Origin: Octopus sinensis
Lineage: Eukaryota
NCBI RefSeq assembly: GCF_006345805.1
Contig: NC_043001.1
Location: forward strand, 38,750,001 to 38,814,000
Reading direction: 5' to 3'
DNA: 64,000 nt
Both the position numbers and the translations under genes were made by a program. The notes below the pieces were generated by a model. That model was not told the origin of the DNA, made no database searches, and was given only the letters and a program-made list of their open reading frames with translations. Shown here in pieces: positions 29,330-64,000 of this stretch (position 1 is its first letter; every line of letters starts with the position of its first letter).

Positions 29330-32300
29330 TATTGAATGTTTATGAGTTCTGCCAAATGCGAGCTTTCTATTCAGGCCCATACCTTCCACAACCTCAGAGT
29401 TGGTACACTTAATATTGGCACATTGAAAGGTAGGGCTGGTGAGATTGTTGAAATGCTTGAATGGAGATGTGTAGATTTGTGCTGCATCCAAGTAGTAAGG
29501 TGGAGAGGAAGTTCTGCTAGGTTCCTCACAGGCAAAGAATACAGGTATAAGATTTTCTGGGCTGGGAACACTGATGGGGTCAGGGGTGTGGGTATACTTC
29601 TTGCGGACACATGAGTTGATAAGGTAATCAAGGTAGTCAGAGTCTATGACAGAATACTTAAGCTTAGATTAGTACCGCAACATGGATTAGCAACCATTAT
29701 CTTGACTTATGCCCCTCAGCTAGGGCTACCTGATGAACAGAAAGATCGATTTTATGATGCCCTCTTACAGACTACCATATCGACAAATGAAAAGGACCTT
29801 CTCTTTGTGGCTGGCGACTTCAATGGGCATGTTGGACAACATCCAGGGGACTTCCATGGTGTGCATGGTGGCTACGGTGGGAACCAGGCTGCTGGAATTC
29901 TGTGATGCAAATGATCTCATGGTTTGTAATACTAACTTCAGGAAACCTGCTAGTCACCTATTCACCTACAAGTCTAGTGGACACACTAGTCAAACTGACT
30001 ACATCCTCACCATGAAACATGAAAGAATGCACCCCACAACATAGGTTAGTAGTTAGTGACTTCAGGACCAGGGCTGAATGGATGCCCAGAAGACAACCAG
30101 CATAGAAAAGAAGGGTCTGGAAGCTTAAGGATCCTCTGAATGGACAGAGAATAAAGGAAGTATTACTTGAATCTTTTAACAAAATAAAGGAAGATATAGC
30201 ATATATAGCATCACCTAATGTGGAAGGCAACTGGAGGTTCCTGCAGGACAACCTGTTGAGGCTACTGACCTGATCTGTGTTTAGTGCAGTGTCCCCTCTC
30301 AACCTAAGGTAACGTGGTGGTGGAACAATGTAGATGACAGGGCCATTAGACAAGAGAAACAGGCATGGAAAGACTGGAAGAATGGTGCCAGCAGGAAACT
30401 GTATCAGATTGTCAGAAGGGAAGCAGAAAAGAAAAAATTTGCCAATGTTCTGTGCCACAAGGACCAAAGACTTGAAGTGTTTCGTGTTGCTTGACTGTGT
30501 GTGAAAGAGAATCATAATATCATAGGAGAGAAATGTGTCCACATGGAGACAACACTATGAAAGGTTGCTAAATGAAGAGAATGAATGGGAGAAAGACAGT
30601 CTGCTAAATGTCAACCCAACAAATGGACCAGATATCCAAATTGACAGTGTTTTGGTAGATAAAGGTATGAAAACAAGGAAAGCCCTTGGCCTATTAACAA
30701 TAACCGGAGAGATGCTTAAAATATCTGGTGGTGTCAGCTATAGTCTAGTCACCCATATAGTCAATCAGGTGATACATGAAGGAGTCATATCCAATGACTT
30801 GGTGTAGCAGCACCATAGTCAACTGCTACAAAGATAAAGGTGACGCTTTAGATACAAATAATTATCAACTTGTTTGATCAGGTATCAACTTGTTTGATCA
30901 GGTAATGAAGGTCACGGAGAGGGTCATAGCCCAACTAATTAGGGAGAGAGTCAGTTTAGATGAGATGCAGTTTGGGTGTGTGCCAAGGAAAAGCACCACT
31001 GATGCTATATCTCTGGTAAGACAGCTACAGGAGAAATTCTTAACCAAAGATAAACCTCTGTACTTGGCTTTCATTGACAAGGAGAAAGCCTTTGACAGGG
31101 TCCCCCAATCCCCTATCTGGTGGTCAATGTGGAAACTAGGGATAGATGAGTGGTTAGTGAGAGCTGTACAAGCCATGTACAGGGATGTTGTCAGTAAGGT
31201 GAGGATTAGTAATGAGTATAGTGAAGAATTCTGGGTAAGGGAGGGGTCCATCAAGGATCAGTCCTCAGCCCCTGCTTATGGATCATAATCCACCAGGCAA
31301 TAAAAGAGGAATTCAAGACAGGATGCCCTGAGAGCTCCCCTATGCTGATGACCTTGCTCTAATAGCTGAGTCACTATCAGAACTAGGAGAAATATCAGGT
31401 GTGGAAGTAAGGCCTAGAGTTGAAGGGCTTTAGAGTCACTCTAGCAAAAACTAAAGAGGAAGGTAGACAAATCACAAATCCCTTGAGGTAGATGGCCCTG
31501 CTCGATCTGTAGAAAAGGCATACGTAGAAACTCCATAAGATGTACCTGGTGTAAGCTATTGACACATAAGAGATGGAGCAATATCAAACAAAGGCTATCT
31601 AGGAAGATAGTTTTTGTCTGTGGCAAATGCACTGCGGCAACAAACACAGAAAATGTGTAGAAAACATCTTTCATCACATGCCAGGGGGAAAACTAGAAAT
31701 AGTTGACAGCTTTCATTACCCAAGTAACCAAGTCAGTCACAGAGTTGGATGCTCTGAAAGTGTAGCTGCTAGAATAAGAATAACCAAGGCAAAGTTCAGA
31801 GAGCTCCTACCTCTGCTGGTAACAAAGGGCCTCTCGCATGATGCATGTGTGCTAACAGACATGCTACATGGCAGTAAGACATGGTCTGTGATTCCTGAGG
31901 ACATGCATAAGCTTGCAAGAAATGGAGCTTGTATGTTCCGCTGGATGTGTAATGTCTGTGCATACACGATGGAGTGTAAGCACCCTGAGAAAGAACTTAG
32001 ACTTAAGGAGCATCAGATGTGCTGTACAAGAGAGATGACTGTGCTGGTATGGTCATGTGTTACATATGTATGAGGACAGTCGTGAAAAAGTGTTACCCCC
32101 TAACAGTTGAGGGAAGTCGTGGAAGAGGTAAACCCAGGAAGACCTGGGATGAGGTAGTGAAGCACAACCTTCAAACATTGGGCCTCATGGAATCAATGGC
32201 AAGTGACCAAGACCTTTGGAGATATGCAGTGTTTGAGAAGACCTGGCAAGCCAAGTGAGACCATATGCCAGAGTAGCATAACCAACCCACTGGGCAATAA

Positions 32301-41999: not shown

Positions 42000-44852
42000 G
42001 GAAGCCTCTGATGATAGAGAAGAGGAGGAGCTAGGAACATACAGCTTAGAGGACAAATGAAAGTTTCTGCAGGACAATCTACTGAGAGCTGCAAACCAAA
42101 TCTGGTGCAAAGTCCCAGCTAAGCTGAGGGTGACATGGTGGTGGAATAGGGAGGTGGACAGCGCTATAAAAGTGAAGAGACAAGCCTAGAAGGACTGGAA
42201 AAATGGTGGAAAAATTATATCAGGTAGCCAGAAGGGAAGCTAGGTGACAGGTTTACATAGCAAAAGGAACAGCAGAAGGCAAGAGCTATGCCAATGTTCT
42301 ATGGTGTGAGGATCAGAGTTGTAAGGTGTTCAGGATAGCAAAGCATGTATCAGAGATAATAGGTGTGTATGTTGGGTGAGAAATGTGTGTGTGAATGGAT
42401 AATGGTATGTTTACAATTAGTGACTCAGAGAAGAAAGATGTGTTGAAGTGCCACTAAGAAAGGTTACTAAATGTGGGAAATGAATGAGAGAAGGAGAGAC
42501 TTTCATATTTTGAAAGAACTAAGGGACCAGCCATCAGAGTTGATAGCAATATAATAGATAAGGCAATTAAGGATATGAAGACAGGTAAAGCCCCTGGACC
42601 ATCAGGTATCACTAATGAGATGATTAAAATATCTGATGGTGTAGAATGCAGCCTAGTCACTCACATAGTTAATTAGATTATTCAAGAAGGCATCATCCCC
42701 AATGACTAGTGTAGTAGTATTATAGTTAGCTGCTACAAGGGTAAAGGTGATGCTTTAGATAGAAACAACTACAGAGGTATCAAACTGCCAGACCAAGTCA
42801 TGAAAGTTACAGAGAGAGTTATAGCTCAATTGATTAGGAATAGAATTAAATTAGATGAGATGCAGTTTGGTTCATCTCATCTAGTTGGGAGTACCACAGA
42901 TGCCATCTTCCAAGTGAGACAGCTGCAGGAAAAGAATTTGGCCAAAAGTAAGCCATTGTACTTAACTTTCATTAACCTGGAGAAAGCTTTTGACAGAAGC
43001 CCCACCACTCTATTATCTAGTAGTTTCCAAGGATACTAGAAGTAGAGGAGTGGCTTGTTAGAACTGTACAAGTCATGTACAGTGGTGCTGACAGGTGAGA
43101 GTTGGCCACGAATACAGTAATGAATTTAGTGTACAGGGCTCAGTTCTTAGTCCACTCCTATTCATTATAGTCCTCCAGGCCATAACAGAGGAATTCAAAA
43201 CTGGATGCCTGTGGGAACTACAATACATGGATGACCTCACTCTTACTGCAGAGTCTGTAGCAGAATTGGAGAAGAAATTCCAGGTATGGAAGTAAAATCA
43301 GGAATCAAAGAACCTTAAAGTTAACCTAGCAAAGACCAAAGTTATTAGCAAGAAAGCAGATAAAACCCTCTTTCCGTGAAGTAAATGGCCCTGCTCAATA
43401 TGAAGGAAAGGAGTGAAAAGTAATTCTATTTGCTGCACCCAGTCTAAGCTATAGACACATAAGAGATGCAATAGAATCGAAGGTGGATTAACAGAGGAGG
43501 TCACTTTCATATATGACAGATGTGCATGAACAATAAGCACTAACAGCATACAAGACTTAGACTCTCTCAATTGCCTAGAAGGCTCTATTGAGGTAGTAGA
43601 TAGTTTCTATTACCTGGCTAACCAAATTAGCAATGAAGTGGATACTTTCAAAGTATTGTTTCTAGAAAAAGGAGAGGATGGAGGAAGTTCAAATTACTAC
43701 TACCTCTACTGGCAACAAAAGAACTCTCTCAGGGTGAAAGGTAGATTGTATGCTTGTGTACAAATGGCTATACTCCATGGTAGTGAGACATGGGCTCTGA
43801 ATGCAGAGGACATGCATAGACTAGAGAGGATTGAAAGAAGTATACTCCACTGGATGTACATGAACAACAAAGCACAGATGTGTTAAGAGAAAAGTTAGGC
43901 ATAAAAGGAATGTAATGCAGTGTGCAAGAGAGGAGACTATGTTGGTTTCGATGTGATGCATATGAATGAAGACAGCTGCATAAAGAGGTACTGGTCACTG
44001 AAAGTGGATGGCACCTGAGGAAGATGGAGATCCAGGAAGACATGGGATGAAGTGGTGAGGACTGATCTCAGGATGCTGGGGCTCCATGAGCTCCAGCATC
44101 ATGAGATCAGTCCTCACAGCATTCCCCCCCACTACATTTGCAATGCTCTGTTACATATATTATGATCTTCATCTCTTGTGGGTATACCCTGGCACTTGCC
44201 ATCATTTATCTCTCTCTTTGTTACTCTACTATCCCATCTATACTCTGCCCACCATTCCTTGTAAGTATATCCTGGCACTTCTCCCCCATCTTTGTCCTAT
44301 ATCTCTTACACCCTTGCTGTCTCCAACTCCCTCTCTCTCTTTCTCTTGCTATTCCCTCTGGATGGGTAATCATGTGTCTCTTCAGCACACCTCTTTCTGT
44401 CCTCATTCTTGATCAGTCTCTCCCCCTCCATCTCTTACTCTTACCTCTGGCAAGGTAACCATGTATCTCCTTTATAGTAGCTCATCTGTTTTTGTCCTCT
44501 TTCTTATTAACTCCCTCTCTCTCTCTCTCTGTTCGGGTAACCATGTATCTCCTCTGTAGCAAACATCTGTTTTCATCTCTTTGTCAGACACTAACTTTTC
44601 ATCATCTGATAAAAGATCACTTTCTTCCATGACCCCTCTCCTCTCCAAGATTCCTTGTCTTGTAAGTTACTGGTGCCACTTAAAAAGCACCCAGTCCATA
44701 CTATAAAGTGGTTGGCATTTGGAAGGGCATCCAACTATAAAAACCATGCCAAAACAGACACAGAAGTATGGTGCAGTCTTCTGTCTGGCTAGCTCCTGTC
44801 AAACCATCCAACCCATGCCAGCATGGAAGGAGGACATTAAACGATGATGATG
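42000..44852 (+). mobile_element. Degenerate RTE LINE
   Basis: ORFs 42800-43039 and 43095-43295 (QGSVLSPLLF...LQYMDD); tail ATGATGATGAT at ~44845. Confidence 0.9.
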
Positions 44853-48784: not shown

Positions 48785-49868
48785 ATGACAGATCTATTGG
48801 ACTTTCAAAGAGAAGAAATTGTTGGTGCTCATATGGCAGGTGCTAGCATAATGCAAACAGCCCAAATGTTTAGTGTATCAAGAAGTACTGTCTTGAAAAT
48901 AACGACAGCTTTGAGAAAGAGGGAAAAACCTCCTCGGTGAAACAAAACTCTGGAAGAAAACCCAAGCTTTCAGATAGGGACTGTTGGATTCTTATGTGTA
49001 TTGTTGGAAAGGATCATAAAAGTACAGCGCCCAAAATTACTGCAGAGCTTAATGATCACTTCAAGAACCCAGTTTCCACAAAAACTGTTCACTGGGAGCT
49101 GCACAAAGCCAGATTTCACAGGAGGGCTACAATCAGAAAACCATTACTTTCAAAAACATACGTTGCAAAACATTTAGAGTGGAGTAAAAACTACCAGAAT
49201 TGGTGCATAGAGCAGTGGAAGAATGTTATTTTCTTGGACAAGTCATCCTTTACCATATTTCTGACCACCGGCCGAGTATATGTGTGGAGACAGCCAAAAG
49301 AAGCATTTGACCCAGACTGCCTTCTTTGAACTGTTAAACATGGAGGAGGATTTGTGATGATGTGTGGGGTGCTATATCTTGGATATCTGCCGGCCCAATG
49401 GTTTCTCTTCATGGCAGAATTAATAGTCAAGGCTATTTAAGCAATTTATCTGATCAAATTTATCATATGGTTGTGGAACTGTTTCTGGAGGCAAACACAA
49501 TATTTCAGGACGATAATGCACCAATTCACACAGCTAAAGTTGTTACTGAATGGCATGAGGAACAATCTAGTGAAGTTGAACATCTTATCTGGCCACCACA
49601 GTCTCCAGATCTCAATATTATAGAATATTTATGGTGCATTTTAGAAAAACAAGTAAGGATCTTGATATCCTCCACCATCATCACTACAAGAACTGGAGAT
49701 TGTTTTAGCTGAAGAATGGACAAATTTTCCTTTGGAAACAATTAAAATTTTGTACGAGTCATACCTCATAGAATTCAACCTGTAATTACTACCAAAGGCC
49801 GTCCTACCCCATATTAAAATGAATTTGTTTGAAATTTTAAGGTGTTTCTATTATTTTGTCTAACCCCT
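48785..49868 (+). mobile_element. Decayed Tc1 (DD34E) transposase and right TIR
   Basis: MTDLLDFQREEIVGA...; ORFs 48937-49329 (SGRKPKLS...WKNVIFLDKSSF) and 49362-49712 (FQDDNAPIH...WPPQSPDLNIIEYLW); ends ...TCTAACCCCTG|TA. Confidence 0.9.
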
Positions 49869-50339
49869 GTATATATATATATATATATATATCTTATTAT
49901 AAAAGGCAGATTTTATCTGCCTCCCTTTGGGAGTTATACAAATCTACAATATAGGATTTCTTCAATTACAATTTACCTAGCATTTTTAAGAGTACAATGC
50001 ATCGCGTCATGCCAGGTCCAGTTTTTAAAATTTAAACTCCAATTAAACAAAATTTACAGAAAACTCACATTCTGGTGTGTGTGTCAAATGCTTTTCTTAG
50101 TCTGGTTTACACCACACGCAAACGCACACACACAGTGGGCAACGGATAAAGTGAAACTAGATGTAATATTTGTTTCTTTCTATCACGCTGATAGATACAT
50201 GAGTAAAATGTATGGGAAGCTAACACATAAGTGTGAGTGAAAATGTTCTTGGAAGAGAGTAAATAGCCAGAGATAGTGATTTGAGGAAGACTTTACATTA
50301 AATAACCATAGTGGCTTGTGTTAGTAATAAAGTAAACAT

Positions 50340-50359
50340 ACACTCATACATACATACAT

Positions 50360-50394
<35 letters not shown>

Positions 50395-50461
50395 TACATA
50401 CATACACACACACATACATACATACACACATACATACATACATACATATACATACATACAT

Positions 50462-50492
<31 letters not shown>

Positions 50493-50615
50493 GTATTGAA
50501 GCTTGAGAACAATCAGATACATTTGCAACACATCTGTTGAAAATATTATTGTTCACACACATACATATACATATATACATACAGACAGATAGACACACAC
50601 ACACACACACACACG
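50340..50615. repeat. (CATA)n/(CA)n microsatellite block
   Basis: Direct inspection. Confidence 0.95.
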
Positions 50616-50706
50616 ATCCAGCATGGCCACAACCTCAAGGCTGAAACATATAAAAGAATAACAGAATATAAATGTGTGCATGTGTGTGAGAGAGAGAGTG
50701 TGTGTG

Positions 50707-51879: not shown

Positions 51880-54316
51880 CATGTATGATGGTTCACTTGC
51901 ACTCAGTGATTCTGGAAAGAAAGAGACCTGGAAGTGCCACTATGAAAGGCTGCTAAATGTAGAAAATACATGAGAGAAGGAGAGTCTGCCTCATGTTGAT
52001 CCAACACAGACAAGCTATCTGAATCAGTGGTAGTCTGGTAGATAAAGCATTTAATAATATGAAGACAAGGAAAGCTTCTAGCCCATCAGTTATCACTGCT
52101 GAGATGTTTAAAACATCTTATAGAGTTGGGCATGACCTAGTCATCTGTATAGATAATCAGGTTGTCCACAAGGAAGTTATACCCAAAGACTGGTGTAGTA
52201 GCATTATAGTCAACTGCTAGAAAGGTAAGGGTGACACCTTAGACAGAAATAATTAGAGAAGTATCAAATTGCTGAGCCAGGTGATGAAGGTTACAAAAAA
52301 GGTCATAACTCAATTAAATAGGAAAAGAGTTAGCTTAGATGTGATGCAGTTCAGTTTTGTGCCAGGAAAATGTCTTACCAATACTATTTTCCTGGAGAGA
52401 CAACTGCAGAAATATTTAGCTGAAAACAAACTTTTGTACTTGGCTTTTGTTGACATGGAGAAAAACTTGGACAGGGTCCCCTGCTCCCGTATCTGGTAGT
52501 CAATGTGGAAGCTAAAGATAAATGACTAGTCGTTATACAAGCCATGTACAGGGACACTGCCAGTAAGGTGAGAGTTAGCAAAGAATATAGCAAGGAATTT
52601 AAGGTAAAGGTAGGAGTTCACCAAGGATTAATACACAGCCTCCTCTTTTGTATCATAGTCTTCTAGGCCATAACAGAGAAACTGAAGACTGGCTGCCATT
52701 GGGCATTCTTCTGCAATGATGATCTTGTTCTTACTGTTGAATCACTACAGAATTAGGGAACAAATTTCAGGTGTGGAAGCAAAGGGCCTTAGAGTTAATT
52801 TAGCAAAAGCCAAAGTCTTGGTAAGTTGGAAAAAGCACTAATCCCTTTAGGGCAATAGTCCTACTCAATATGAAGGAAAGTTGTTGATAGAAACTCCATA
52901 TGGGATGCCCAGTGATAGCTATGGACACATAAGAGGTGCAGCAATATAACAGGAAGATTTAGAGAGAAAGTAGTCTTTGTGAGTGGTAAATGTGCAGGTA
53001 CAGAAAACAGACTCTCTCAAATGTTAGAAGGGTCTGTAGAAGTAATAGATAGTTTCTGTTACCTAGGTAACCAAATTAGTGGTGAAGAAGGAAGCTCTGA
53101 AGGCATAGGTGTTAGAATAAGAACAGACTACACAATGTCCAGAGAGCTGCTACATTTGTTGGTAACAAAGAGTCTCACTCTCAGAGGGAAAGTCAGAGTG
53201 TATGATGACTGTATGAACAGCTATGCTACATGGCAGTGAATTATGGGTTCTGGCTACAGAGAACATGCAAAGGCTTGAAAGAAATGAAGTCAGCCTATTC
53301 CACCGGATGGGTAATGTTAGGGTGCATATATGACAGAGTGTAAATGATTTATGAGAAAATCTGGGTATAAGAGTATTGAAGAGAGAAGTATAGTATGGAA
53401 GAGAGAAGGCTGCACTGTAACGGATGAGGACAGCTGCATAAAGAAGTTCTAATCTCTGTCTGTGCAGGAAACCTATAAAAGGGGTAAAGCCAGAAAGACA
53501 AGGGACAAGTTGGTGAGAAATGATCTACAAAGGTAGACTCTCTTTGAGAAGATAACAAAGGAGCAAGACTTCTAGTGGTTTGTTGTGCTCGAGGAGACAT
53601 ATCAAGCTAAATAACATAATGGTCATCTATACATACAGGCATACCTTTTACAACCATAGCTCCACCTTCACATACACACATAATTCTATCCTCTGGCAAA
53701 AACCACCCACAATCTACCTCCCTAACAACCCCACCATCCGCTGCAGGCCTCTCCAGTTCTTCTCACCATTACTTGCTATATCTCTAAATATCACCCCTCA
53801 CCATTATTCTCTTTAGGTAGGTCCCCCCTCTCTCTCTCTCTCTGACTGTCTATATCTTTCTCTCTTCTACTCCCACTTCCCTCCCCTTTATTGTCCTACT
53901 GGGTTACCAAGTATCATCTCTGTCGTAAGACAGCTATCCCAGTCCCAATGTCATACTTCCACTTATCACCTGGCACATGGCCACTTCTCTTCGTTCCTCT
54001 CCTTCTCTCAACTGAGATGGTCTTGTCTTGCAAGCTACTTGGCAATGCTATGGGTGCTGGTGCCACATGAAAAGCATCTGTGCTGGCACTATGAATAAAG
54101 CATCCATGCTGGCACCACATAAAAAAAAAACCCATGCTGAAACCAAATTAAAAGCTCCTAGTACATTTTGTAAAGTGATTGGCATTATGAAGGGCATCCA
54201 ACTGTAGAAACTATGCCAAAATAGAAGACGGGAGCCTGGTGTAGCCCTCTGATTTACCAGCTCTTGTTAAACATGGAAAACATATATCAAGTAATGATGG
54301 TGATGTTGATAATGAT
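51880..54316 (+). mobile_element. Degenerate RTE LINE 3' half
   Basis: ORF 52269-52499 (MQFSFVPGK...LAFVDMEKNLDRVP); (GAT)-like tail at ~54295-54316. Confidence 0.85.
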
Positions 54317-55349
54317 GTAGCAGGTAACAACTTCAGACTTGGAGAGTTAAAAGGACTTGGAGACACAAACCAATCTGGAAAATATCCAGTTTAAGAGCAA
54401 TTTCTTCTTGATCATGGAATAGGGTAAATAAACTTTCATCCTCATTTCTAAGCAGATTGAATGTTTTTTTTAATGTAAAAAATACGTAAGTAAACCCTAC
54501 TCTTCACCAGGGTGGGTGAGTGTAAATATAAACCCCTTTCCCCCATTGTCTGTTATTTCTTAAAAAGCTTTCTCAAAACGGTAAAAGTTGTGATAATGAA
54601 AGTTTGTGATTTTCATTTTTAATACTTGTAACACATTTTTGGAGCTTTTCTATATTCATGCATGCATTCTTTAAATTTTGCAGGTCTGCCATCATATTCC
54701 AACCCTTTCAAATTTTGCTTTCTGGTATGGAAATTGCATCCATGTGTATACAGCCTGTTAATGCTTTAAGTGCATTTTCTTTTTAGTGATTTGACACTAA
54801 GTTATATGCATATTTTCAAGTGCCATGCAATATTTTTAGGCTAACTGAAGAATTCACACACACAAGATAGCAAATTTTTACAGATAAGTTTTGGTATTTT
54901 CAGAAGGTATCCTAGAAATGCTAATGTCAGCAAAACTTATGCCATCACAGCAGCCAATTCAATACAAAAACTAGAAGAACTTGTGTTGGCCTTCCATTGT
55001 GAAATTTCAAGCTTATATCAAATTCTATCCCACTCTCTCTTTCCTCATGTGGTTGAATGATTGAAATTCCTTTATTTTCAATATCGATAGGCAAATAACT
55101 TCAAACTGCTACCAAACCTAACTTCTCTCACTTGCTCTGTGAAAATATACGGTTATTTCAGATCTTGAATAATGAATATTTCATCTCTCTACTCACTGAC
55201 AAATTAATTTCAACTTAGATTGGTAAATTTCATGGTGGAATATTCTATCATGCAATATCAACTGAATCCATTTCTAATACCCACCCACTACTCACCATCA
55301 CTTCTGCAAAAGCGACTCAAGCATATGCATAAATGCTTAGTTTATATCT

Positions 55350-55624
55350 TGTGGTTGATGAAAGGAGCACAACGGAAACAAGGAAATAGGAAACAGAGGT
55401 GCAATAAGGTCTTACCTGACGGGGGATGAAGTCGGATGGCCTTCAGCCAACTTGCTCGCGTGTTGTCGTCTCGGTGCCTTGCTGGGGTCTGCCGTAGCCG
55501 GTCGATGCCGCACGTGCGTTGAGTCTCTCGCTTCCGCTTCCGCCGGCGCATGCGCCCTGCAAGACCTGTAAGCATCACTTCCGCTCCCGCCCGTCCCGTC
55601 ACACTCCTTCATCACCACACCACA
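55350..55624 (-). repeat. 3' LTR (275 bp)
   Basis: Matches the 5' LTR at 274 of 275 nt; preceded on minus by the PPT. Confidence 0.97.
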
Positions 55625-55633
55625 CGCCCCCCT
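55625..55633 (-). other. Polypurine tract
   Basis: AGGGGGGCG immediately 5' of the 3' LTR on the element strand. Confidence 0.8.
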
Positions 55634-55660
55634 GATCTATAAATCACTGAACCAGCTTCC

Positions 55661-58593
55661 TCACTCGCTCCCGCACCCGAAACTGGTTTCATAATCAGCC
55701 AGCCAGGGAGGAGGGTGCCGGTCCCTCTGTGGTCGCAGCGCGACCCTAGGACTTGTTTCTGGTGTGTTGCTGTCGACCTCGTCATCCTGTCGGTTGTTTT
55801 CGTCCTGCCTACTGTTGCTTGTCCCATCCTCTGGGGCATGGACAATCCTCCGTATGTCCAAAACGTGGCGTGGCATACCATCGATGGAGATGTTATTTTT
55901 CGAACTTACGGAGGTTATTGTCCCCTTTCCCCATTGCGATGTACACCGTGCGTTTGGGGGTTTTACCCAGACTTCCTCCCCGACCCGCACGAAGGCGTGC
56001 TCTTCCTCTGCCCCGGGTTGCATTGATTTAGTACACGGATGCCTCCACTCGTACCTGAATATTGCTCTGTGTGGCACCGATTCCTCAGCCTGTCCGGATC
56101 GGGGAGACAAGTTGTACCAAAAAACTGCTTCAAGCGGCGAAATGTGCCCCCTTTCCGCTATGGCCTTGACTGTCCGATGGTGCCTCTCCACGATCCCGTT
56201 ACCGCCCGGCCCCTATACGCTGCTCTGAACAAGCGTCGCACGTTCCACCGATCAAGCATAACCCTCAATGCTTCCGAACGAAATGCCGCCCCGTTGTCCA
56301 TCAGTAGTTCTTCCACGGGACCTCTCTCTAAAAATATCCCGTTCAGGATCTGCACGATCTCGTCAGCAATGCCCGATCTCAACTCCCTCCAAATGGCCAG
56401 CCGGCCCGGCCCACAGTCGACCATGGAGAGGTACGCTCGCTGACGGTAGTGTGTCACATCCACAGCTAGCCTTTTCCAGTTCTGCTCCACGGAAAGGCTT
56501 CCCTGTTCATGCCCACACAGAGCAGGGTCGATGGACTGACACCTGTCGCAGCTCCCGACCACCTTCCGGACGCTTCTCCTGGTCACGTCAGCATCAATCT
56601 TTTTTGCCAGATACAGGGTCCTGTCCACCCCCAGGTGATGCATAGCGTGCAATTTCTTCAGCTCGGAGTCATCCAACCGACACGCCGCAGCTATCCCTCT
56701 CCGCGCCTCCTCCGGTTCTTCCAGCCACGCCCTTTTCACCCTGGTCAGTACGTCCGCCTTGTTTTTCTCCGAAGGCACGAAGACCACGTTCAGCTTGAGT
56801 CCGAATTCGGCGATCAGTTCACCTAGAACTCCTAGGCGGCGCTTCACTAACATCTCCGCAGCACCTTTCGTCCGCACTCTCCTGTCACCGGTGATCACTG
56901 ATCCTACCCAGCCAAGCACAGTGGCCAAATCCGTCCGCATTTCAATCGTGCGCAGCCCCCATTTCAAGGCCAAGTTCACCCCTTTCAGTAGCGCGTCTAG
57001 TTCGGCGACATTGATGTGGTTGAAATCATCTGCTTTCCGAAGCCAGGACGCGTCCTCCACCGCAGTGCCTTCGATTGCCAACACCACCCCTATCGCTATA
57101 CTGCTAGCGTCACACCAGACAGTCCCGCATTTCGTCCTGGGCACGTACCAGTTCCCCCTGACTGGGTCTTCCGCTCTTGTCCTCTCTAGGATCTCCTGCA
57201 TCATCGCCACCGTCCCTTCTCCCACCTTGTCGCCCCACCTCTCTCCTTCTGCTCGTCTCTTGGTGTAACTACACGCCGTGCGCAGCCATCCAGCGATCGG
57301 GTAGTGACCGACCAACTTCCCACACACCGAGAACAGCTCTCTCCTGCTGACGCTGGAACTCAGCTCTGGGATTTCATTTCCTCTCCGGAACACCAATTCG
57401 CCTGATCTATCTCTTCGCAGCTTCAGCCCCAGTGCGGCTCCCCCTTCAATCGACTCCGGCGGCTTAGCAATCAGTCCGAACTTCTCCAGATGTCTCACTA
57501 CCTCGTCGGCTGCCACTACAGTTTCGTCCACCAAAATGTCGTCAATGTAGGAGCTGGTGGCCTTTCTAATCTTGCCGTCTTTCCCCAGGACGGACCTAAG
57601 CACTGCCGACATGATCTTCGGAGCAGAATTCAGCCCGAAACCCAGCCTGGTTAGACAGTACGTCCGGCCCTTGTACCGCACCAGCTGATATCGCCATAGT
57701 TTGTCGCTCACATGGAGCTGCAAGTATGCCGATCTCAAGTCGACAATCGTCGCTGCCTCAGTCGACTGTCTCCACTTGCGCAATGCCTCACCACAAACGT
57801 CTGTCGCCTCACCTCCCGTGTGACACGATATGTGCTGGTTTAACTCCCTGAAGTCCAGCACCGGTCTAACTTTTCCCTTCGTAGGCTGCACCACCGCCAT
57901 CAGGGGTAGCACTCCGCCCGCTACCTCCTCCTTCCAAGGGACAAGGATCCCTTCCTTGATCCACCTCTCCACCTCGTCTTCAAACTCAACCCTGGCGTGG
58001 CCTTTCAGAGTATGCTGGTAACAGCTCACCCTGTTCTCCAGTGTCGGGGGCTCGTCCTTCCATTTCCACTCTATCGTCCACCGCCGACCATCGAACGCCG
58101 CCTGAAAGTCCTTGTCCTCGATGGTGTAAGCAGCGCCGTCCCTCGCGGGGCTCTGCTCCCTCTGGTCATCCTGACTCGCAGCGCACGACGCCCCCACGCT
58201 TCCGAACGTGACCTTATTTCCCACAACGCTGACGCCACCGAGGCAGTTGATGGCGTCCATCCCCATCACCACATCAACTCCATTTATCACGCGTTCGGCC
58301 ACAATTGCCTGTAGCCTTAGCGTCGCGCCGCGCACCACTATCTCTACCGCGCTGCTGCCTCTGCAACGGATTTCGCTGCCGTCGACCGCCCGGACACTAC
58401 ACACCCCGTTCCATTCCTTCGTCACCCTCGAAGTCACCAGGGTGGTCGTACAGCCCGTATCCACAAGGGCCTTGAACCTCTCCCCCTCGGCCTCCACGTC
58501 GATCACTGGCAGTGTCTCCAATAGCGCCTCTACTCGTTTGAGGGGAAAGTTCGAGAGGCAGCAACTTCCCCGCGGTCGTTTCCCTGGCCGCAA
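55661..58593 (-). CDS. pol: Pol (protease, RT, RNase H, integrase) in the -1 frame; one frameshift near 56210
   Basis: ALVDTGC; LGFGLNSAP...YIDD; WCDASS...NVAELDA...RTD; HAMHHLG...CDRC; VDVTH, MDNG; the VERHHR part continues in ORF 55661-56191. Confidence 0.93.
58526..58584 (-). promoter_or_regulatory. Predicted -1 ribosomal frameshift signal (slippery heptamer plus H-type pseudoknot)
   Basis: G_GGA_AAC in the gag frame, 6-nt spacer, stem 1 GGGGAAGUU/AACUUUCCCC, stem 2 GCCUCU/AGAGGC. Confidence 0.8.
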
Positions 58594-59294
58594 TCACGGG
58601 CAATGTGCCCTGTCTGCCTGCATCGATAGCAAACTGGCCCCAGCTGCGTACAGTCCCGCGCCATGTGCGGTCCCTGGCATTTAAAACATCGTCCTGAGAA
58701 CGGCCGCTCTCGTTGCACGGTGGGCTTCCGTACCTCTTTCTCGTGACGTCGTCCGTCTTTACGCGCCTCCGTCACCGCCATCGCTACCCCCTTCCGCTCC
58801 GAGTGTCTCGTCAACCCGCGAGCATGAGTTACGAGCTCGCTCAATGGCATCTTTTTGACCCCGGGCAGTTGTTGTAGGTGAATTCCTACGTCATCGGGGA
58901 AGCCATTTACGAATGCCAGTCGGGCTGCTCTCTCCAGTCCTTCTCCGGCAAACCCGGCCAGAGTCGCTAGCCTTCTAGCTTCCGCCGCAAAATCATCTAC
59001 CTGGCCTCCCGTCCACCTGATTGCACCCAGCTTAGCAAAAGCTGTGTACTCGCATTCCGTGTATGCGTCACACAAGCGCCGCTCTATATTCCGATCGCAG
59101 AGCCGTTCTTTTTCGTCCATTTCTAGGTAGAGCGACAACGCACTTCCTTCCAAATACAGGACCATAAGACTCGCCACGTCGCTTATGCCCTGCAGTCTCG
59201 CCACCAGCCTGATTTTCCGAATCCAGGCCACTACATCGCCTTCGCCGTTAAAAGATCTAACGACGTCACTGGCGATCCTAATTTTTGCCGACAT
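58530..59294 (-). CDS. gag: Gag (254 aa) with two CCHC-type zinc knuckles
   Basis: ATG (MSAKIRIASDVV...) 32 nt after the PBS; CFKCQGPHMARDC and CYRCRQTGHIARDC. Confidence 0.93.
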   Translation of the reverse strand: MSAKIRIASDVVRSFNGEGDVVAWIRKIRLVARLQGISDVASLMVLYLEGSALSLYLEMDEKERLCDRNIERRLCDAYTECEYTAFAKLGAIRWTGGQVDDFAAEARRLATLAGFAGEGLERAARLAFVNGFPDDVGIHLQQLPGVKKMPLSELVTHARGLTRHSERKGVAMAVTEARKDGRRHEKEVRKPTVQRERPFSGRCFKCQGPHMARDCTQLGPVCYRCRQTGHIARDCGQGNDRGEVAASRTFPSNE

Positions 59295-59326
59295 CGTGTT
59301 GAAAAAAATGTGAACACTGACTAAAT

Positions 59327-59338
59327 GCCGAAATAGCT
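59327..59338 (-). other. Non-canonical primer-binding site AGCTATTTCGGC
   Basis: Directly abuts the 5' LTR; lacks TGG; is the reverse complement of GCCGAAATAGCT, nt 1-12 of metazoan tRNA-Phe(GAA). Confidence 0.75.
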
Positions 59339-59613
59339 TGTGGTTGATGAAAGGAGCACAACGGAAACAAGGAAATAGGAAACAGAGGTGCAATAAGGTC
59401 TTACCTGACGGGGGATGAAGTCGGATGGCCTTCAGCCAACTTGCTCGCGTGTTGTCGTCTCGGTGCCTTGCTGGGGTCTGCCGTAGCCGGTCGATGCCGC
59501 ACGTGCATTGAGTCTCTCGCTTCCGCTTCCGCCGGCGCATGCGCCCTGCAAGACCTGTAAGCATCACTTCCGCTCCCGCCCGTCCCGTCACACTCCTTCA
59601 TCACCACACCACA
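59339..59613 (-). repeat. 5' LTR (275 bp)
   Basis: Identical to 55350-55624 except one position (59507 A vs 55518 G). Confidence 0.97.
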
Positions 59614-59869
59614 TATCTTTTATTATATTTTTATGACCCATGAACATGTACATAGACGTATGGAAAATATTTGCAATGTATGTGTATACACTTGAATGAA
59701 GGCTTTCTAGCACTGAAGGAAATTAAAACTGAATTGTAACATTATTTTTCACACTAATCACAAGGACCTGCAGCCTCTAGGCATGTGACCCCAAAAATCT
59801 TTCTCTTTCATTAACTGAAAGCATTCTTCAAGACTCCTTGGTTCTACAGATGCAGAGACAGGTAGATTT

Positions 59870-60609: not shown

Positions 60610-63600
60610 AGACTAAGTAGTATGGGTATTCTATTAGCAGAGAAATGAAGTATAAGGTGACTGAAGTAGTGTGATAGGATTATTAAGCTTAGAATAACCT
60701 TGGTTGATGTAATTGTGTCAGTGATCTCTGCATATGTTCCACTTCAAACTCACATACTCAGAAAGGCCACATCTGCAGACTACCTTGACAATGAAAGATG
60801 ACAACATTCACATCATTGCATGAGTCTTCAATTGACATGTTGGACAGCACTCCAATGAATTTCATGGTGAGCATGGAAGCTGTGGTTTTAGTTCCAGAAC
60901 TGAGGAGGGGACAAGGTTACTGAAGTTTTGTGATGCTCATGGCTTACCAGTCTGCAACACCAAGTTCAGAAAACCTGCCAATCATATGATCACTTATCTA
61001 AAGATCGAGAGATGCAAGCCAATATAGAAAAGGATGTTGTAGAATTTCAAGGATCTTCCAAAAGGACAGAGATTTAGAGATGTCCTTAATGAAGCCTTTG
61101 ATGAGAAGGGGGAAGAGATAGAGACATATAACATACAAGACAACTGGAAGTTCCTACGAGACAATCTACTAAGAGCAACAGACCAAATCTGTGATTGGAG
61201 CAAAGCCTCTGCCAGGCCAAGGTGATGTGGTGGTGGACAGTGATGTTGACAGGGCCATAAAAGAGAAGAGATAGGTCTATAAAGAATGGGATAAAAGGGT
61301 GGGAGTAGCAATTAATCATATTAGAAAGCTAAAAGGGAAGCTAGACATCAGGTTTATCTAGCTAGAGTAGAAGCAGAAAAGAAGAGATTTGCCAATGTAC
61401 CACAATGGGAAGATAAGAGATTTGAAGTGCTCCGAATTACCAGAGTGTCAGTGAGAATCAAGATAATGTGCAAGTGTGTGCAGATGGATAATGGCATGCT
61501 TACATTTAATGATGTGGACAAGAAAGAGGTGTGGAAAAGTTACTATGGAAAACTGTTGAATGTAGAGAATGAATGTGATAAAGGGAGTCTCCCTCAAGTG
61601 AAACCAAGAGAGGGACCAGCTGTCCTAGTGGTCAGCAGTATGGTAGATAAGGCAATTAAAAGCTAAGATGCTCAAAATATCTGGTACGGTAGGATACCAG
61701 ATAGTCACCTGCATAGTTAACTAGGTCATTCAGGAAGATGTAAATTCTAGTGTTTGGAGTAGCAGCATTATTGTTAGCTGCTACAACAGTAAGGGGGATG
61801 CTTTAGACAGAAGTAATTAATTATCAAACTCCTGGACCAGGTGATGAAAATTAGAGAGAGAGTTATAGCTCAATTAATTAGGAGCATGATTAGGTTTGAT
61901 GAAATGCAGTTCAGTTTCATCAGAGAGAGAAGCACTGCTGACACTATTTTTATAGTGAGGCAACTGAAAGAGAAGTATTTAACTAAGAATAAACCATATA
62001 CTTGGCATTTGTTGATCTAGAGAAAGCCTTTGATAAAGTACTCTATTGTGTGATATGGTGTGCTCTGAGGAGACTGGGGATAGACAAGTGGCTGGATAAA
62101 GTTGTACAGACTATGTACAGAAACGCTGTCAATAAGGTGAGAGTTAACCATGAGTGCAGCAAAAAATTCATCAAGGCTCAGTCCTTAGTCTCCACCTTTC
62201 CATTATTGTCCTCCAACAGAGAAATTCAAGACCAGCAGCCCTAAGTTATCTTAAGAAATGTTCACATGCTTCAGAACAGCTGCAGCAACATCGACAATAA
62301 CAACAGTAATGCCGGTGGCATGTAAGAGAACCATCCGAAAGTGGCCATTGCCAGCGCCACCCCGACTACTATATACTGATGATCTTACCCACATAGCAGA
62401 CTCCACATTAGAGCTAGAAGAGAAATTCCACTTGTGGAAGCAAAATCTGGAATCAAAGAGCCTTAAGATTAACTTAGTGAAGACTAAAGTCTCAGTAAGC
62501 AAGAAAACAGACAGGACCCTCCCTGCTTCAAATAGGTGGCCCTGTTTGATTTCTGAGAAAAGTGTAGGTAGGAACTCCATACGGTGTACCCAGTATAAGC
62601 TATGGACACACAAGAGGTGCAGTGGATTAATAGGAAGTTTATCAGAGAAGGTAATATTCATACACTGAAAATGCACAAGATCCATAAAAACTATAGAGAC
62701 TTAGGAAATTGATTCTCTCAAAAGCCCTGGTGGCTCATTAGAGATAGTAGGACCAAGTTAGGAGTGGAGGAGGATGCACAGAGAGTGTGATAGCTAGAAT
62801 AAGAATAGGGTGGAGGAAATTCAGAGAGCTGTTACGTTTGTTAGCTATGAAAGGCTTTCCTCTTCAAATGAAAAGAAGATTGTAAGACGCATATATACAG
62901 ACATCCTACATGCTAGTGAGATGTAGGCCCTGAATGCAGAGGACATGCAAAGGTTAGAGAGGAATGAGAATGGAATGCTCTGTTGGATGTGTAATGCAAG
63001 CATACATGTTCGACAGAGTGCTAGTGTACTGAGACAGAAGTTAAGCATAAGAGGAATTAGATGCTCTGTGCAAGGAAGAAGACTACATTGGTTTGGTCAT
63101 GTGATGAAGATGGATGCTGACACTCCATAAAAAAGTGCCAATCTCCCTAAGTAGACAGAACACATCGGAATGGGACACTCAGGAAGACATGGGTACTAAA
63201 GACGACCTCAGGATGCTAAACCTTTCGGGTAAGATGACAAAGGACTGAAATGCTTGGTACCTTGGTGTACTGAAGAAGACCCATGCTCCACAATAGAATT
63301 GTTAATACTGGTCCCTCTGGTGAAGAGAATTGGCCTGCAAGAGTCCTGTGCCAGTGCCATGTAAAATCACCCAGGACACTCTGTGGTTGGCACTAGAAAG
63401 GACATCCAGCCATAGAAACCATGACATATTAGACTAGAGCCTGGTACAGCTCTTCAGCTTGCCAGCTCTGGTCAAACTGTCCAACCCATACCAGCATGAG
63501 TCTTCTTAAAGTGAACTTAGTAGAGACTCAGTATCTGAACTGAGAGCTGTAAGACAGATACAGGAATAAAGTCTATGAAGACAAGGAAAGCCCCTGGTTA

Positions 63601-64000
63601 ATCAGGAATTACCACAATCATCTTCATCATTATCACCGTTTAATGTCCATTTACCATGCTGGAATGAGTCAGATGTGTCTTTTACATGGCACTAGCACCA
63701 GTGAGGTCACCAAGTAACTTGCAAGTCAAAAATCCTTCAACTGAGAGCGTGAGTGGGTTATGACATAGTCACTAGTATGGTTAATCAGGTTGTCCACAAA
63801 AGTATCACGCCCAACAACTGCTACAAATGTAAAGGAAAGGGCTTAGACAGAAGTAATTAGAGGCATGATATTCCTGGAGCAGGTCATGAAAGTAACAGAA
63901 AACAGTTATAACCTCAACTAATTAGGAAGAGAGTTAACAAAGATGAGATACAGCTCGTTTTTGTGTCAGGGCAACCAGTACTGATGCTATCTTCTAAGTA
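60610..64000 (+). mobile_element. Degenerate, rearranged RTE LINE fragments
   Basis: EN relic, ORFs 62002-62244 (LAFVDLEKAFDKV), 62258-62668 (LYTDD...KTKV...Cys cluster), 62945-63130; tail at ~63340-63500; further RT fragments to the window end. Confidence 0.85.

What the first reader, a model, noticed from the sequence alone, without database searches (positions are those of the whole stretch)
59327..59338. LTR retrotransposon PBS complementary to the 5' end (nt 1-12) of tRNA-Phe: candidate new priming mode
Seen: on the element strand the 5' LTR (...CAACCACA) is followed directly by AGCTATTTCGGC, with no TGG. Established: metazoan cytosolic tRNA-Phe(GAA) begins GCCGAAAUAGCUCAGUUGG. A canonical Phe PBS would read TGGTGCCGAAACCCGG (3' end). 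Known exceptions are copia/Ty5 (tRNAiMet cut in the anticodon stem) and Tf1 (first 11 nt of its own RNA, cut by RNase H). The match includes TAGCT (nt 8-12), which only the 5' strand has, and stops exactly at the LTR edge, so the primer's 3' end points into U5. Inference: minus-strand synthesis is primed by a 12-nt 5' tRNA-Phe fragment, either a pre-existing tRF-5 or one made by a Tf1-like RNase H cut of annealed tRNA. I know of no description of this mode but cannot check the literature.
Basis: partly seen in the sequence, partly recalled or inferred. Interest (0 to 1): 0.88.

Follow-up and report, generated by a model that had tools for sequence, protein, structure and literature searches.

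The report
tRNA 5'-end primer site, LTR retrotransposon
A young LTR retrotransposon, and about fifty relatives from molluscs, crustaceans and environmental DNA, carry a 12-base site exactly where reverse transcription must start. The site pairs with the first 12 bases of the host's phenylalanine tRNA instead of a tRNA's tail, which points to a way of priming that I could not find described.

Summary
On the minus strand lies a 4,264-bp LTR retrotransposon with 275-bp LTRs (1 mismatch) and an AGATA target duplication. Its 5' LTR ends ...CAACCACA at 59339. AGCTATTTCGGC follows at once (59338-59327). This is the exact complement of nt 1-12 of metazoan tRNA-Phe(GAA).

The match is not chance. In 52 related elements (35-79% Pol identity) the same 12-nt slot directly abuts the LTR end. 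Hosts include Argonauta, Aplysia, a crab, a mantis shrimp and many environmental contigs. tRNA positions 1-3 and 7-12 hardly change, positions 4-6 vary, and both flanks drift.

Four variants equal the 5' ends of real eukaryote-type tRNA-Phe genes found in public data. One equals tRNA-Lys(CUU). No element carries the complement of the site in its LTR, so Tf1-type self-priming is excluded. Often gag starts 0-20 nt after the site, which leaves no room for another PBS.

The best reading is that the first 12 nt of host tRNA-Phe prime minus-strand synthesis, after a cut between nt 12 and 13, probably by the element's RNase H. The cut and the priming are inferred, not shown. I found no description of this mode in the searchable literature.

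The parts
59614..59618 (-). target-site duplication AGATA, upstream copy
   Evidence: the same 5 bases follow the 3' LTR
59339..59613 (-). 5' LTR, 275 bp, TGTGG...CCACA
   Evidence: 274/275 identical to the 3' LTR; no other copy in the window
59327..59338 (-). primer-binding site AGCTATTTCGGC, complementary to nt 1-12 of tRNA-Phe(GAA)
   Evidence: the same slot is filled in 52 relatives
59252..59260 (-). TTAGATCTT inside gag, complementary to tRNA-Phe nt 35-43 (anticodon arm); possible second contact, weak evidence
   Evidence: 6 of 13 GAAA-type elements have 8 nt or more of complementarity downstream of the PBS, against 1.1 in shuffles; position not conserved
58530..59294 (-). gag, 254 aa, two CCHC zinc knuckles
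   Evidence: zf-CCHC 2.6e-9
56158..58593 (-). pol in the -1 frame relative to gag. Order: aspartic protease, RT (YIDD), DUF7047, cellular-type RNase H, integrase zinc finger and core. The reading frame breaks in the integrase near 56200
55661..56191 (-). rest of the integrase (GNGIVERHHRT... to the C terminus) in another frame; this copy has a frameshifted integrase
   Evidence: the family consensus FRAAYRPSGNGIVERHH is split between two frames here
55625..55633 (-). polypurine tract AGGGGGGCG abutting the 3' LTR
   Evidence: similar tracts in relatives
55350..55624 (-). 3' LTR
55345..55349 (-). target-site duplication AGATA, downstream copy

Best explanation
The 12 bases after the 5' LTR are the element's minus-strand primer-binding site. 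They pair with the 5'-terminal 12 nt of the host's cytoplasmic tRNA-Phe (acceptor-stem 5' strand, U8, A9 and the first three D-stem bases), not with a tRNA 3' end.

The LTR ends at the base before the site, so DNA synthesis must start from a 3'-OH on tRNA nt 12. The tRNA therefore has to be cut between U12 and C13. I think the cut is most likely made on the annealed tRNA by the element's own RNase H. This would parallel Tf1 RNase H, which cuts that element's own 5' end after nt 11. A ready-made 12-nt 5' fragment is the alternative.

Plus-strand strong-stop synthesis would then copy the 12-nt RNA to its 5' end. That would explain why the site is exactly 12 nt long. It would also explain why its variable positions follow the host tRNA.

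Shown: the anatomy, the complementarity, its conservation, and its match to real tRNA genes. Inferred: priming itself, the cut, and the enzyme.
For: 1. Anatomy in the window. LTRs, target duplication, polypurine tract, gag and pol are all present. The site abuts the LTR and no TGG lies before gag.

2. Family-wide conservation. 52 loci carry ...CA|AGCTAT-NNN-GGC in the same slot. LTR-pair boundaries found independently of the motif place the site at the first base after the LTR in the window, L001-L004, L015 and L245. Both flanks carry almost no information. The motif was found only 4 times elsewhere in about 330 kb of those loci.

3. The variants equal real eukaryote-type tRNA-Phe(GAA) 5' ends.
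- GCCGAAATAGCT: L144, L163, L164, L198, L217.
- GCCGTGATAGCT: L152, L158 and L232. In L232 it sits in an array of 5S rRNA plus 25 metazoan-looking tRNAs, and only Phe matches 12/12.
- GCCGCGATAGCT: L133, in a tandem unit with Metazoa_SRP RNA.
- GCCTAGATAGCT: L091.
- GCCCGGCTAGCT equals tRNA-Lys(CUU) in L232 and L198, and matches L041.

4. The variants are interspersed on the RT tree. Two molluscs have GAAA (Argonauta L001, Aplysia L245). Two malacostracans have TAGA (crab L002, mantis shrimp L003). This is as expected if the host tRNA sets the site.

5. There is no self-primer. The longest complement of the site in up to 450 nt upstream (at least 200 nt) is 7 nt or less in 41 elements.

6. gag often starts 0-20 nt after the site, so there is no space for another PBS.

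7. The RNase H domain is present with its conserved motifs.
Against: - There is no biochemical evidence. No strong-stop cDNA, small-RNA data or cleavage assay was available.
- The window's host is unknown and the window holds no tRNA gene, so the host tRNA-Phe was not read directly.
- I found no matching tRNA gene for GCCGGGATAGCT, GCCGTAATAGCT, GCCGAGGTAGCT, GCCGTGTTAGCT or GCCTCGGTAGCG.
- Whether malacostracan tRNA-Phe starts GCCTAGA is unverified. L091, which carries such a gene, has no known host.
- L246, 79% identical in Pol to the crab element, has GAAA and its host is unknown.
- A 12-nt RNA primer needs a cut inside the D stem, and no enzyme has been shown to make it.
- Part of the conservation table is circular, because the search pattern fixed 8 of the 12 positions.
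Confidence: 0.65

Rival explanations
1. The pairing is the same, but the primer is a pre-existing 12-nt (or trimmed 13-16-nt) 5' fragment of tRNA-Phe made by host nucleases and packaged. It is not a tRNA cut in place by the element's RNase H.
For: 5' tRNA fragments are a known small-RNA class (reviews found). Nothing in the sequence data tells the two routes apart.
Against: Known 5' fragment classes are longer (14 nt and more; tRFs are given as 16-35 nt in PMC7515703, abstract). A longer fragment would leave an unpaired 3' flap at the LTR edge, because the LTR base next to the site is A in 43 of 44 contexts, opposite tRNA C13. Tf1 sets a precedent for a cut by the element's RNase H (PMC4600332).
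Confidence: 0.2
2. The 12-mer binds the 5' end of tRNA-Phe, or a 5' fragment, for another purpose such as packaging, translation control or host silencing. Minus-strand synthesis is then primed by something not yet seen.
For: Extra complementarity to the tRNA-Phe anticodon arm lies downstream in some elements, so tRNA contacts beyond priming are possible.
Against: The site always starts at the first base after the LTR, which is the position that defines the primer's 3' end in every LTR element. No other candidate PBS exists, and gag often starts within 20 nt. The site is exactly as long as the distance to the tRNA's 5' end, as expected if the primer is copied during plus-strand synthesis.
Confidence: 0.1
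3. Tf1/sushi-type self-priming: the site pairs with the 5' end of the element's own transcript.
For: No TGG, an 11-12-nt site directly after the LTR, and pairing with an RNA 5' end all resemble Tf1.
Against: No copy of GCCGAAATAGCT occurs anywhere else in the window, even with 1 mismatch allowed. In 41 elements the longest complement of the site in the upstream LTR is 7 nt or less, mostly none.
Confidence: 0.02
4. Chance resemblance, or the primer is the 3' end of some other cellular RNA that ends in ...GCCGAAAUAGCU.
For: The host genome was not available, so other RNAs could not be screened.
Against: The site recurs in 52 elements. Its variants equal five different real tRNA 5' ends. Complementarity never extends past tRNA nt 1, as expected if the partner RNA ends there.
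Confidence: 0.03

Closest known systems
Tf1 / Tj1 / sushi-group self-priming (Schizosaccharomyces Tf1; Levin 1995, 1996, as summarised in PMC4600332)
   Same: The site abuts the LTR and lacks TGG. The duplex is 11-12 bp and involves the very 5' end of an RNA. A cut at the end of the duplex is needed to make the 3'-OH, and in Tf1 the element's RNase H makes it.
   Different: Here the partner is a host tRNA, not the element's own transcript. No complement of the site lies in the LTR. The proteins are not close to chromoviruses. The nearest solved structures are retroviral IN and RT, and no Ty3 hit appeared.
copia / 1731 / Ty5 'half-tRNA' priming (5' fragment of tRNA-iMet cut in the anticodon stem-loop; from my own knowledge: Kikuchi 1986, Ke and Voytas 1999)
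   Same: The primer is a 5' piece of a host tRNA produced by an internal cut.
   Different: There the PBS pairs with the anticodon-stem region (about nt 25-39) of initiator tRNA-Met and the primer is about 39 nt. Here the PBS pairs with nt 1-12 of tRNA-Phe (or Lys), so the primer would be 12 nt, cut in the D stem. The element has Ty3/retrovirus gene order, not copia order.
Canonical tRNA 3'-end priming (retroviruses, Ty1, Ty3, most Gypsy and BEL elements)
   Same: A host tRNA is the primer, the PBS lies next to U5, and different lineages use different tRNAs.
   Different: The canonical PBS starts with TGG and pairs with the last 8-18 nt including CCA. For tRNA-Phe it would read TGGTGCCGAAACCC. 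None is present. Current pipelines look only for 3' ends (for example PMC13524379), so this type would be scored as 'no PBS'.
Skipper elements of dictyostelids (non-canonical polypyrimidine site; PMC5006619)
   Same: LTR elements without a TGG site and without a self-primer in the LTR.
   Different: Skipper has a degenerate pyrimidine tract with no identified partner. Here the partner is identifiable base for base.

Membership tests
LTR retrotransposon with Ty3/retrovirus gene order | two LTRs with TG..CA ends, target-site duplication, polypurine tract | tested here: met
   275-bp LTRs 274/275 identical, TGTGG...CCACA, AGATA duplication, AGGGGGGCG before the 3' LTR
LTR retrotransposon with Ty3/retrovirus gene order | gag with zinc knuckles; pol in the order PR-RT-RNase H-IN | tested here: met
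   two CCHC knuckles; DTG protease, YIDD RT, DUF7047, RVT_3/RNase_H-type RNase H, HHCC + DDE integrase
Ty3/gypsy (Metaviridae) proper | RT and RNase H of the Ty3/gypsy type (Pfam RT_RNaseH families; Ty3-like RT) | tested here: inconclusive
   No RT_RNaseH hit; the RNase H hits RVT_3 and RNase_H. Best solved relatives are MMTV integrase (2e-16) and MLV RT (2e-5), and no Ty3 RT or integrase appears among the matches listed (one search shows the best 60 of 144). No phylogeny with reference elements was run.
BEL/Pao | Pao-type peptidase and associated domains (Peptidase_A17, DUF1758/1759/5641) | tested here: not met
   none of these families hit
Canonical tRNA 3'-end PBS | TGG... complementary to a tRNA 3' end within a few bases of the LTR | tested here: not met
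   no TGG between the LTR and gag; the site reads AGCTATTTCGGC
Tf1-type self-priming | a sequence complementary to the PBS at the transcript's 5' end inside the LTR | tested here: not met
Tf1-type self-priming | RNase H cut at the end of the primer-PBS duplex | not testable with these tools
   needs an enzyme assay
copia-type half-tRNA priming | PBS complementary to the anticodon-stem region of tRNA-iMet | tested here: not met
   The site matches tRNA-Phe nt 1-12. The iMet gene in L232 starts AGCAGAGTGGCG, unrelated to the site.
Proposed tRNA 5'-end priming | 12-nt site at the first base after the LTR, complementary to nt 1-12 of a host tRNA | tested here: met
   Window plus 52 loci; five variants equal real tRNA genes
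Proposed tRNA 5'-end priming | the site matches the tRNA of the same host genome | not testable with these tools
   No host genome could be scanned for tRNAs. Indirect support only: molluscs have GAAA, malacostracans have TAGA.
Proposed tRNA 5'-end priming | strong-stop cDNA joined to the 12-nt tRNA fragment | not testable with these tools
   needs experiments

The most novel reading that the evidence does not exclude
A widespread, compact (about 4.0-4.9 kb) lineage of retrovirus-like LTR elements lives in marine invertebrates and other eukaryotes. It starts reverse transcription from the first 12 nucleotides of host tRNA-Phe (tRNA-Lys or others in some branches), released by an RNase H cut after nt 12. 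This would be a third way of using a tRNA as primer. Mechanistically it would bridge tRNA priming and Tf1-type self-priming. Standard PBS finders overlook it because they test only tRNA 3' ends.
Probability: 0.5. Interest if true: 0.9.

Novelty: new variant of a known kind. Interest (0 to 1): 0.85.

Why it matters
Primer choice is one of the defining steps of retroviral and LTR-retrotransposon replication. Only three modes are in the textbooks: the tRNA 3' end, a half-tRNA cut in the anticodon stem, and self-priming.

A fourth mode conserved across a deep family would matter in several ways.

- It would show that the PBS can read the other end of a tRNA.
- It would give a natural trans-acting counterpart to the Tf1 RNase H cut.
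- It would predict that host 5' tRNA fragments, not 3' fragments, can target or feed these elements.
- It would explain why annotation pipelines report such elements as lacking a PBS.

The comparative data also show a PBS tracking host tRNA-Phe acceptor-stem variants. That makes primer copying during plus-strand synthesis directly testable.

Tried and rejected
- Self-priming was rejected.
- A canonical PBS was rejected.
- Insertion into a tRNA gene was rejected. The site is internal, and the target duplications flank the LTRs.
- There are no tRNA genes or Rfam families in the window.
- The window's gag is not on record in the assembly index, so other copies from the same host could not be fetched.
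- A protein scan of viral contigs and the first metagenome scan found nothing. The scan with an alignment gave 76 loci.
- Folding U5-PBS-leader gave no structure beyond shuffles (z = 0.66).
- Complementarity of U5 to the rest of tRNA-Phe is not above chance.
- Nine literature searches were run: priming terms, the site and tRNA sequences as text, and DUF7047. They found the tRNA-Phe sequence but no description of a PBS complementary to a tRNA 5' end. Levin 1995 could not be opened.
- The host of the window was not identified. Its other content is metazoan-type repeats.

Full report
**What is there**

The finding lies in a complete LTR retrotransposon on the minus strand, 55350-59613 (4,264 bp).

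- The two LTRs are 275 bp, differ at one base, begin TGTGG and end CCACA. The 5-bp duplication AGATA flanks them.
- The internal part encodes a 254-aa Gag with two CCHC knuckles.
- Pol lies in the -1 frame. It has an aspartic protease, RT (YIDD), a DUF7047 domain, an RNase H of the cellular RVT_3/RNase_H type, and an integrase.
- The integrase reading frame is broken near 56200, so this copy is defective.
- A polypurine tract AGGGGGGCG abuts the 3' LTR.
- The first base after the 5' LTR is 59338. From there to 59327 the element strand reads AGCTATTTCGGC. The gag ATG follows 32 nt later, with no TGG in between.

**Is the match real?**

The 12-mer is the exact reverse complement of GCCGAAATAGCT. 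That is the 5' end of tRNA-Phe(GAA) in human (PMC10505166) and Drosophila (PMC7038984). It is also the 5' end of eukaryote-type tRNA-Phe genes I recovered from public contigs (L144, L163, L164, L198, L217).

It occurs once in the window even with one mismatch allowed. The pairing ends on one side at tRNA nt 1. On the other side it ends at the LTR edge, where the LTR's A faces tRNA C13.

**Relatives**

Pol has hundreds of relatives at 35-79% identity. The representative library holds 677 clusters at E <= 1e-30. Named hosts are Argonauta hians, Aplysia californica, the crab Petrolisthes manimaculis and the mantis shrimp Oratosquilla oratoria. Most others are 3.5-5-kb contigs from sequencing-run and metagenome assemblies.

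I fetched 4 genomic loci, 76 metagenome loci and 4 more. Wherever the start of gag and its upstream sequence were present, the same slot was filled.

- In 52 loci...CA is followed at once by AGCTAT-NNN-GGC or a close variant.
- Four further loci carry versions degraded by 1-3 changes.
- LTR pairs define the boundary without reference to the motif. They put the site at the first base after the LTR in the window, L001-L004, L015 and L245.
- The motif was found only four times elsewhere in about 330 kb of these loci.
- The 14 bases on either side carry almost no information, apart from the terminal ACA of the LTR. My search pattern fixed 8 of the 12 positions, so the table is informative only for the flanks and for positions 4-7.
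- In many relatives gag starts 0-20 nt after the site.

**The variants are tRNA 5' ends**

Written in the tRNA sense, the sites and their locus counts are:

| Site (tRNA sense) | Loci |
|---|---|
| GCCGAAATAGCT | 16 |
| GCCGTGATAGCT | 10 |
| GCCGCGATAGCT | 10 |
| GCCGGGATAGCT | 5 |
| GCCTAGATAGCT | 4 |
| GCCCGGATAGCT | 2 |
| GCCCGGCTAGCT | 1 |
| GCCGTAATAGCT | 1 |
| GCCGAGGTAGCT | 1 |
| GCCGTGTTAGCT | 1 |
| GCCTCGGTAGCG | 1 |

Positions 1-3 and 8-12 are constant or nearly so, position 7 is A in 40 of 44 contexts, and positions 4-6 vary. This is how acceptor stems vary among tRNA-Phe genes.

Scans for the tRNA-Phe body recovered eukaryote-type tRNA-Phe(GAA) genes with four of these 5' ends. These genes have no encoded CCA, and T-runs follow several of them.

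- GAAA: the loci listed above.
- GTGA: L152, L158 and L232. In L232 the gene lies in an array of 5S rRNA plus 25 tRNA species that look metazoan. Phe is the only one matching 12/12; tRNA-His shares 10 of 12.
- GCGA: L133, in a 3.7-kb tandem unit with a Metazoa_SRP RNA.
- TAGA: L091.

tRNA-Lys(CUU) in L232 and L198 starts GCCCGGCTAGCT, the site of L041. GCCCGGATAGCT is the 5' end of human tRNA-Lys3, from my own knowledge and consistent with the papers hit. I found no gene for the remaining variants.

On a neighbour-joining tree of the RT region the variants are interspersed. Within the crab element's close relatives, both TAGA (L002, L247, L248) and GAAA (L246) occur. The two molluscs have GAAA and the two malacostracans have TAGA. 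This is what one expects if the host's tRNA sets the site, but the hosts' tRNA genes could not be read here.

**Rivals**

- Tf1-type self-priming is excluded. The complement of the site is absent from the window. In the upstream LTR of 41 elements it never exceeds 7 nt.
- A canonical PBS is absent.
- Insertion into a tRNA gene is excluded by the target duplications.
- A non-priming role for the site cannot be excluded by sequence alone. It does not explain why the site always starts at the base that defines the primer's 3' end, nor why it is exactly as long as the distance to the tRNA's 5' end.

**Mechanism**

U5 ends where the primer's 3'-OH sits, so the primer must end at tRNA nt 12. This is inferred from the general scheme of LTR-element reverse transcription. 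The tRNA has to be cut between U12 and C13.

The closest precedent is Tf1. There the first 11 nt of the transcript pair with the PBS and the element's RNase H cuts at the end of the duplex (summarised in PMC4600332). I therefore favour a cut by the element's RNase H on annealed tRNA-Phe. A ready-made 5' fragment is the alternative.

Plus-strand strong-stop DNA would copy the 12-nt RNA to its end. This would regenerate a 12-nt site and let the primer's sequence overwrite positions 4-6. Retroviruses are known to copy the primer into the PBS (PMC7472051).

**What it is close to, and novelty**

The gene order is that of Ty3/gypsy elements and retroviruses. However, the RNase H is of the cellular type, a DUF7047 domain lies between RT and RNase H, and the nearest solved structures by sequence are MMTV integrase and MLV RT rather than Ty3. 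I did not place the lineage phylogenetically.

The priming mode resembles Tf1 (5' end of an RNA, 11-12 bp, a cut needed) and copia/Ty5 (a 5' tRNA piece). It fails the defining feature of each.

Nine full-text searches found no description of a PBS complementary to a tRNA 5' end. A recent large survey searched only the 12 nt at tRNA 3' ends (PMC13524379). The searchable library lacks most older subscription papers, so prior description cannot be ruled out.

**Housekeeping**

In some searches my scripts held the window slice 55200-59760, or the 3,714-bp internal region, as one string. Searches wrote such a slice to the scratch folder, and copies of the fetched loci were also written there. Nothing of that length was printed.

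I deleted all scratch files and worked piecewise afterwards.

Noticed in passing
window 56158-58593 (-); A2: The Pol of this family has a cellular-type RNase H (Pfam RVT_3/RNase_H) preceded by DUF7047. By sequence it is nearest to retroviral integrase (MMTV, 2e-16) and RT (MLV, 2e-5), with no Ty3 hit among the matches listed and no BEL/Pao domains. The lineage may be an unclassified retrovirus-like group; 677 clusters at E <= 1e-30.
   Followed up: partly
window 59252-59260 (-); L005, L017, L055: 6 of 13 GAAA-type elements have 8-9 nt of extra complementarity to tRNA-Phe within 150 nt downstream of the site, against 1.1 in shuffles. Of the 7-9-nt matches within 250 nt downstream, those in four elements (the window, L005, L017, L055) fall on the anticodon arm (nt 31-43). 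The positions are not conserved and AGATCT is a palindrome, so this may be nothing.
   Followed up: partly
L011, L022, L031, L041, L044, L049 (contig ends): Many metagenome contigs of the family have identical 110-151-nt ends and are circular permutations with a period of 3.96-4.63 kb. This is as expected from assembly collapse of the two LTRs, or from one-LTR circles.
   Followed up: no
L001 2970-2990 and 7020-7035: In the Argonauta copy both LTRs end ...ATCAAG instead of ...CA, with TCAGT as the target duplication. Complementarity to tRNA-Phe is then 13 nt (through C13).
   Followed up: partly
L133/L137/L175, L232, L164, L144: Contigs filed under bacterial MAGs (Gracilimonas, Denitrobaculum, Endozoicomonas and others) carry eukaryotic Pol III gene arrays. 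One is a 3.7-kb tandem unit with Metazoa_SRP RNA and seven other tRNA species besides Phe. Another has 5S rRNA plus 25 tRNA species in 4.4 kb. These are probably host DNA binned by mistake. L164 also has a tRNA-Phe body with a TAA anticodon.
   Followed up: partly
L126, L130, L140 and other Thermoplasmata loci: tRNA-Phe of Thermoplasmata archaea starts with the same 12 nt (GCCGTGATAGCT) as one eukaryotic variant. Methanothrix has GCCCAAGTAGCT.
   Followed up: no
L045 150-165, L054 72-88, L073 205-222, L075 325-340: Four elements carry sites degraded by 1-3 changes (for example AGCTATCGCGCA, AGCTATCCGGAC, AGCTATCACCGGGC). They are probably old, decayed copies.
   Followed up: no
L051 1409-1420: One basal element has CGCTACCGAGGC, which in tRNA sense is GCCTCGGTAGCG. 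That 5' end has a GCG D stem and resembles elongator tRNA-Met rather than Phe. No matching gene was found.
   Followed up: no
window 19473-21072, 26361-26984, 30890-32073, 48937-49329: Fragments of non-LTR retrotransposon RT (RTE/CR1-like motifs) and of a Tc1/mariner transposase. They indicate an animal host rich in repeats.
   Followed up: no
window 50308-50640; 44676-44758, 54143-54225, 63351-63433; 52123-52599 vs 61805-63820: A long (ACAT)n/(AC)n microsatellite. An 83-nt SINE-like repeat in three copies. Two 73-75% identical copies of another repeat lie on either side of the LTR element.
   Followed up: no
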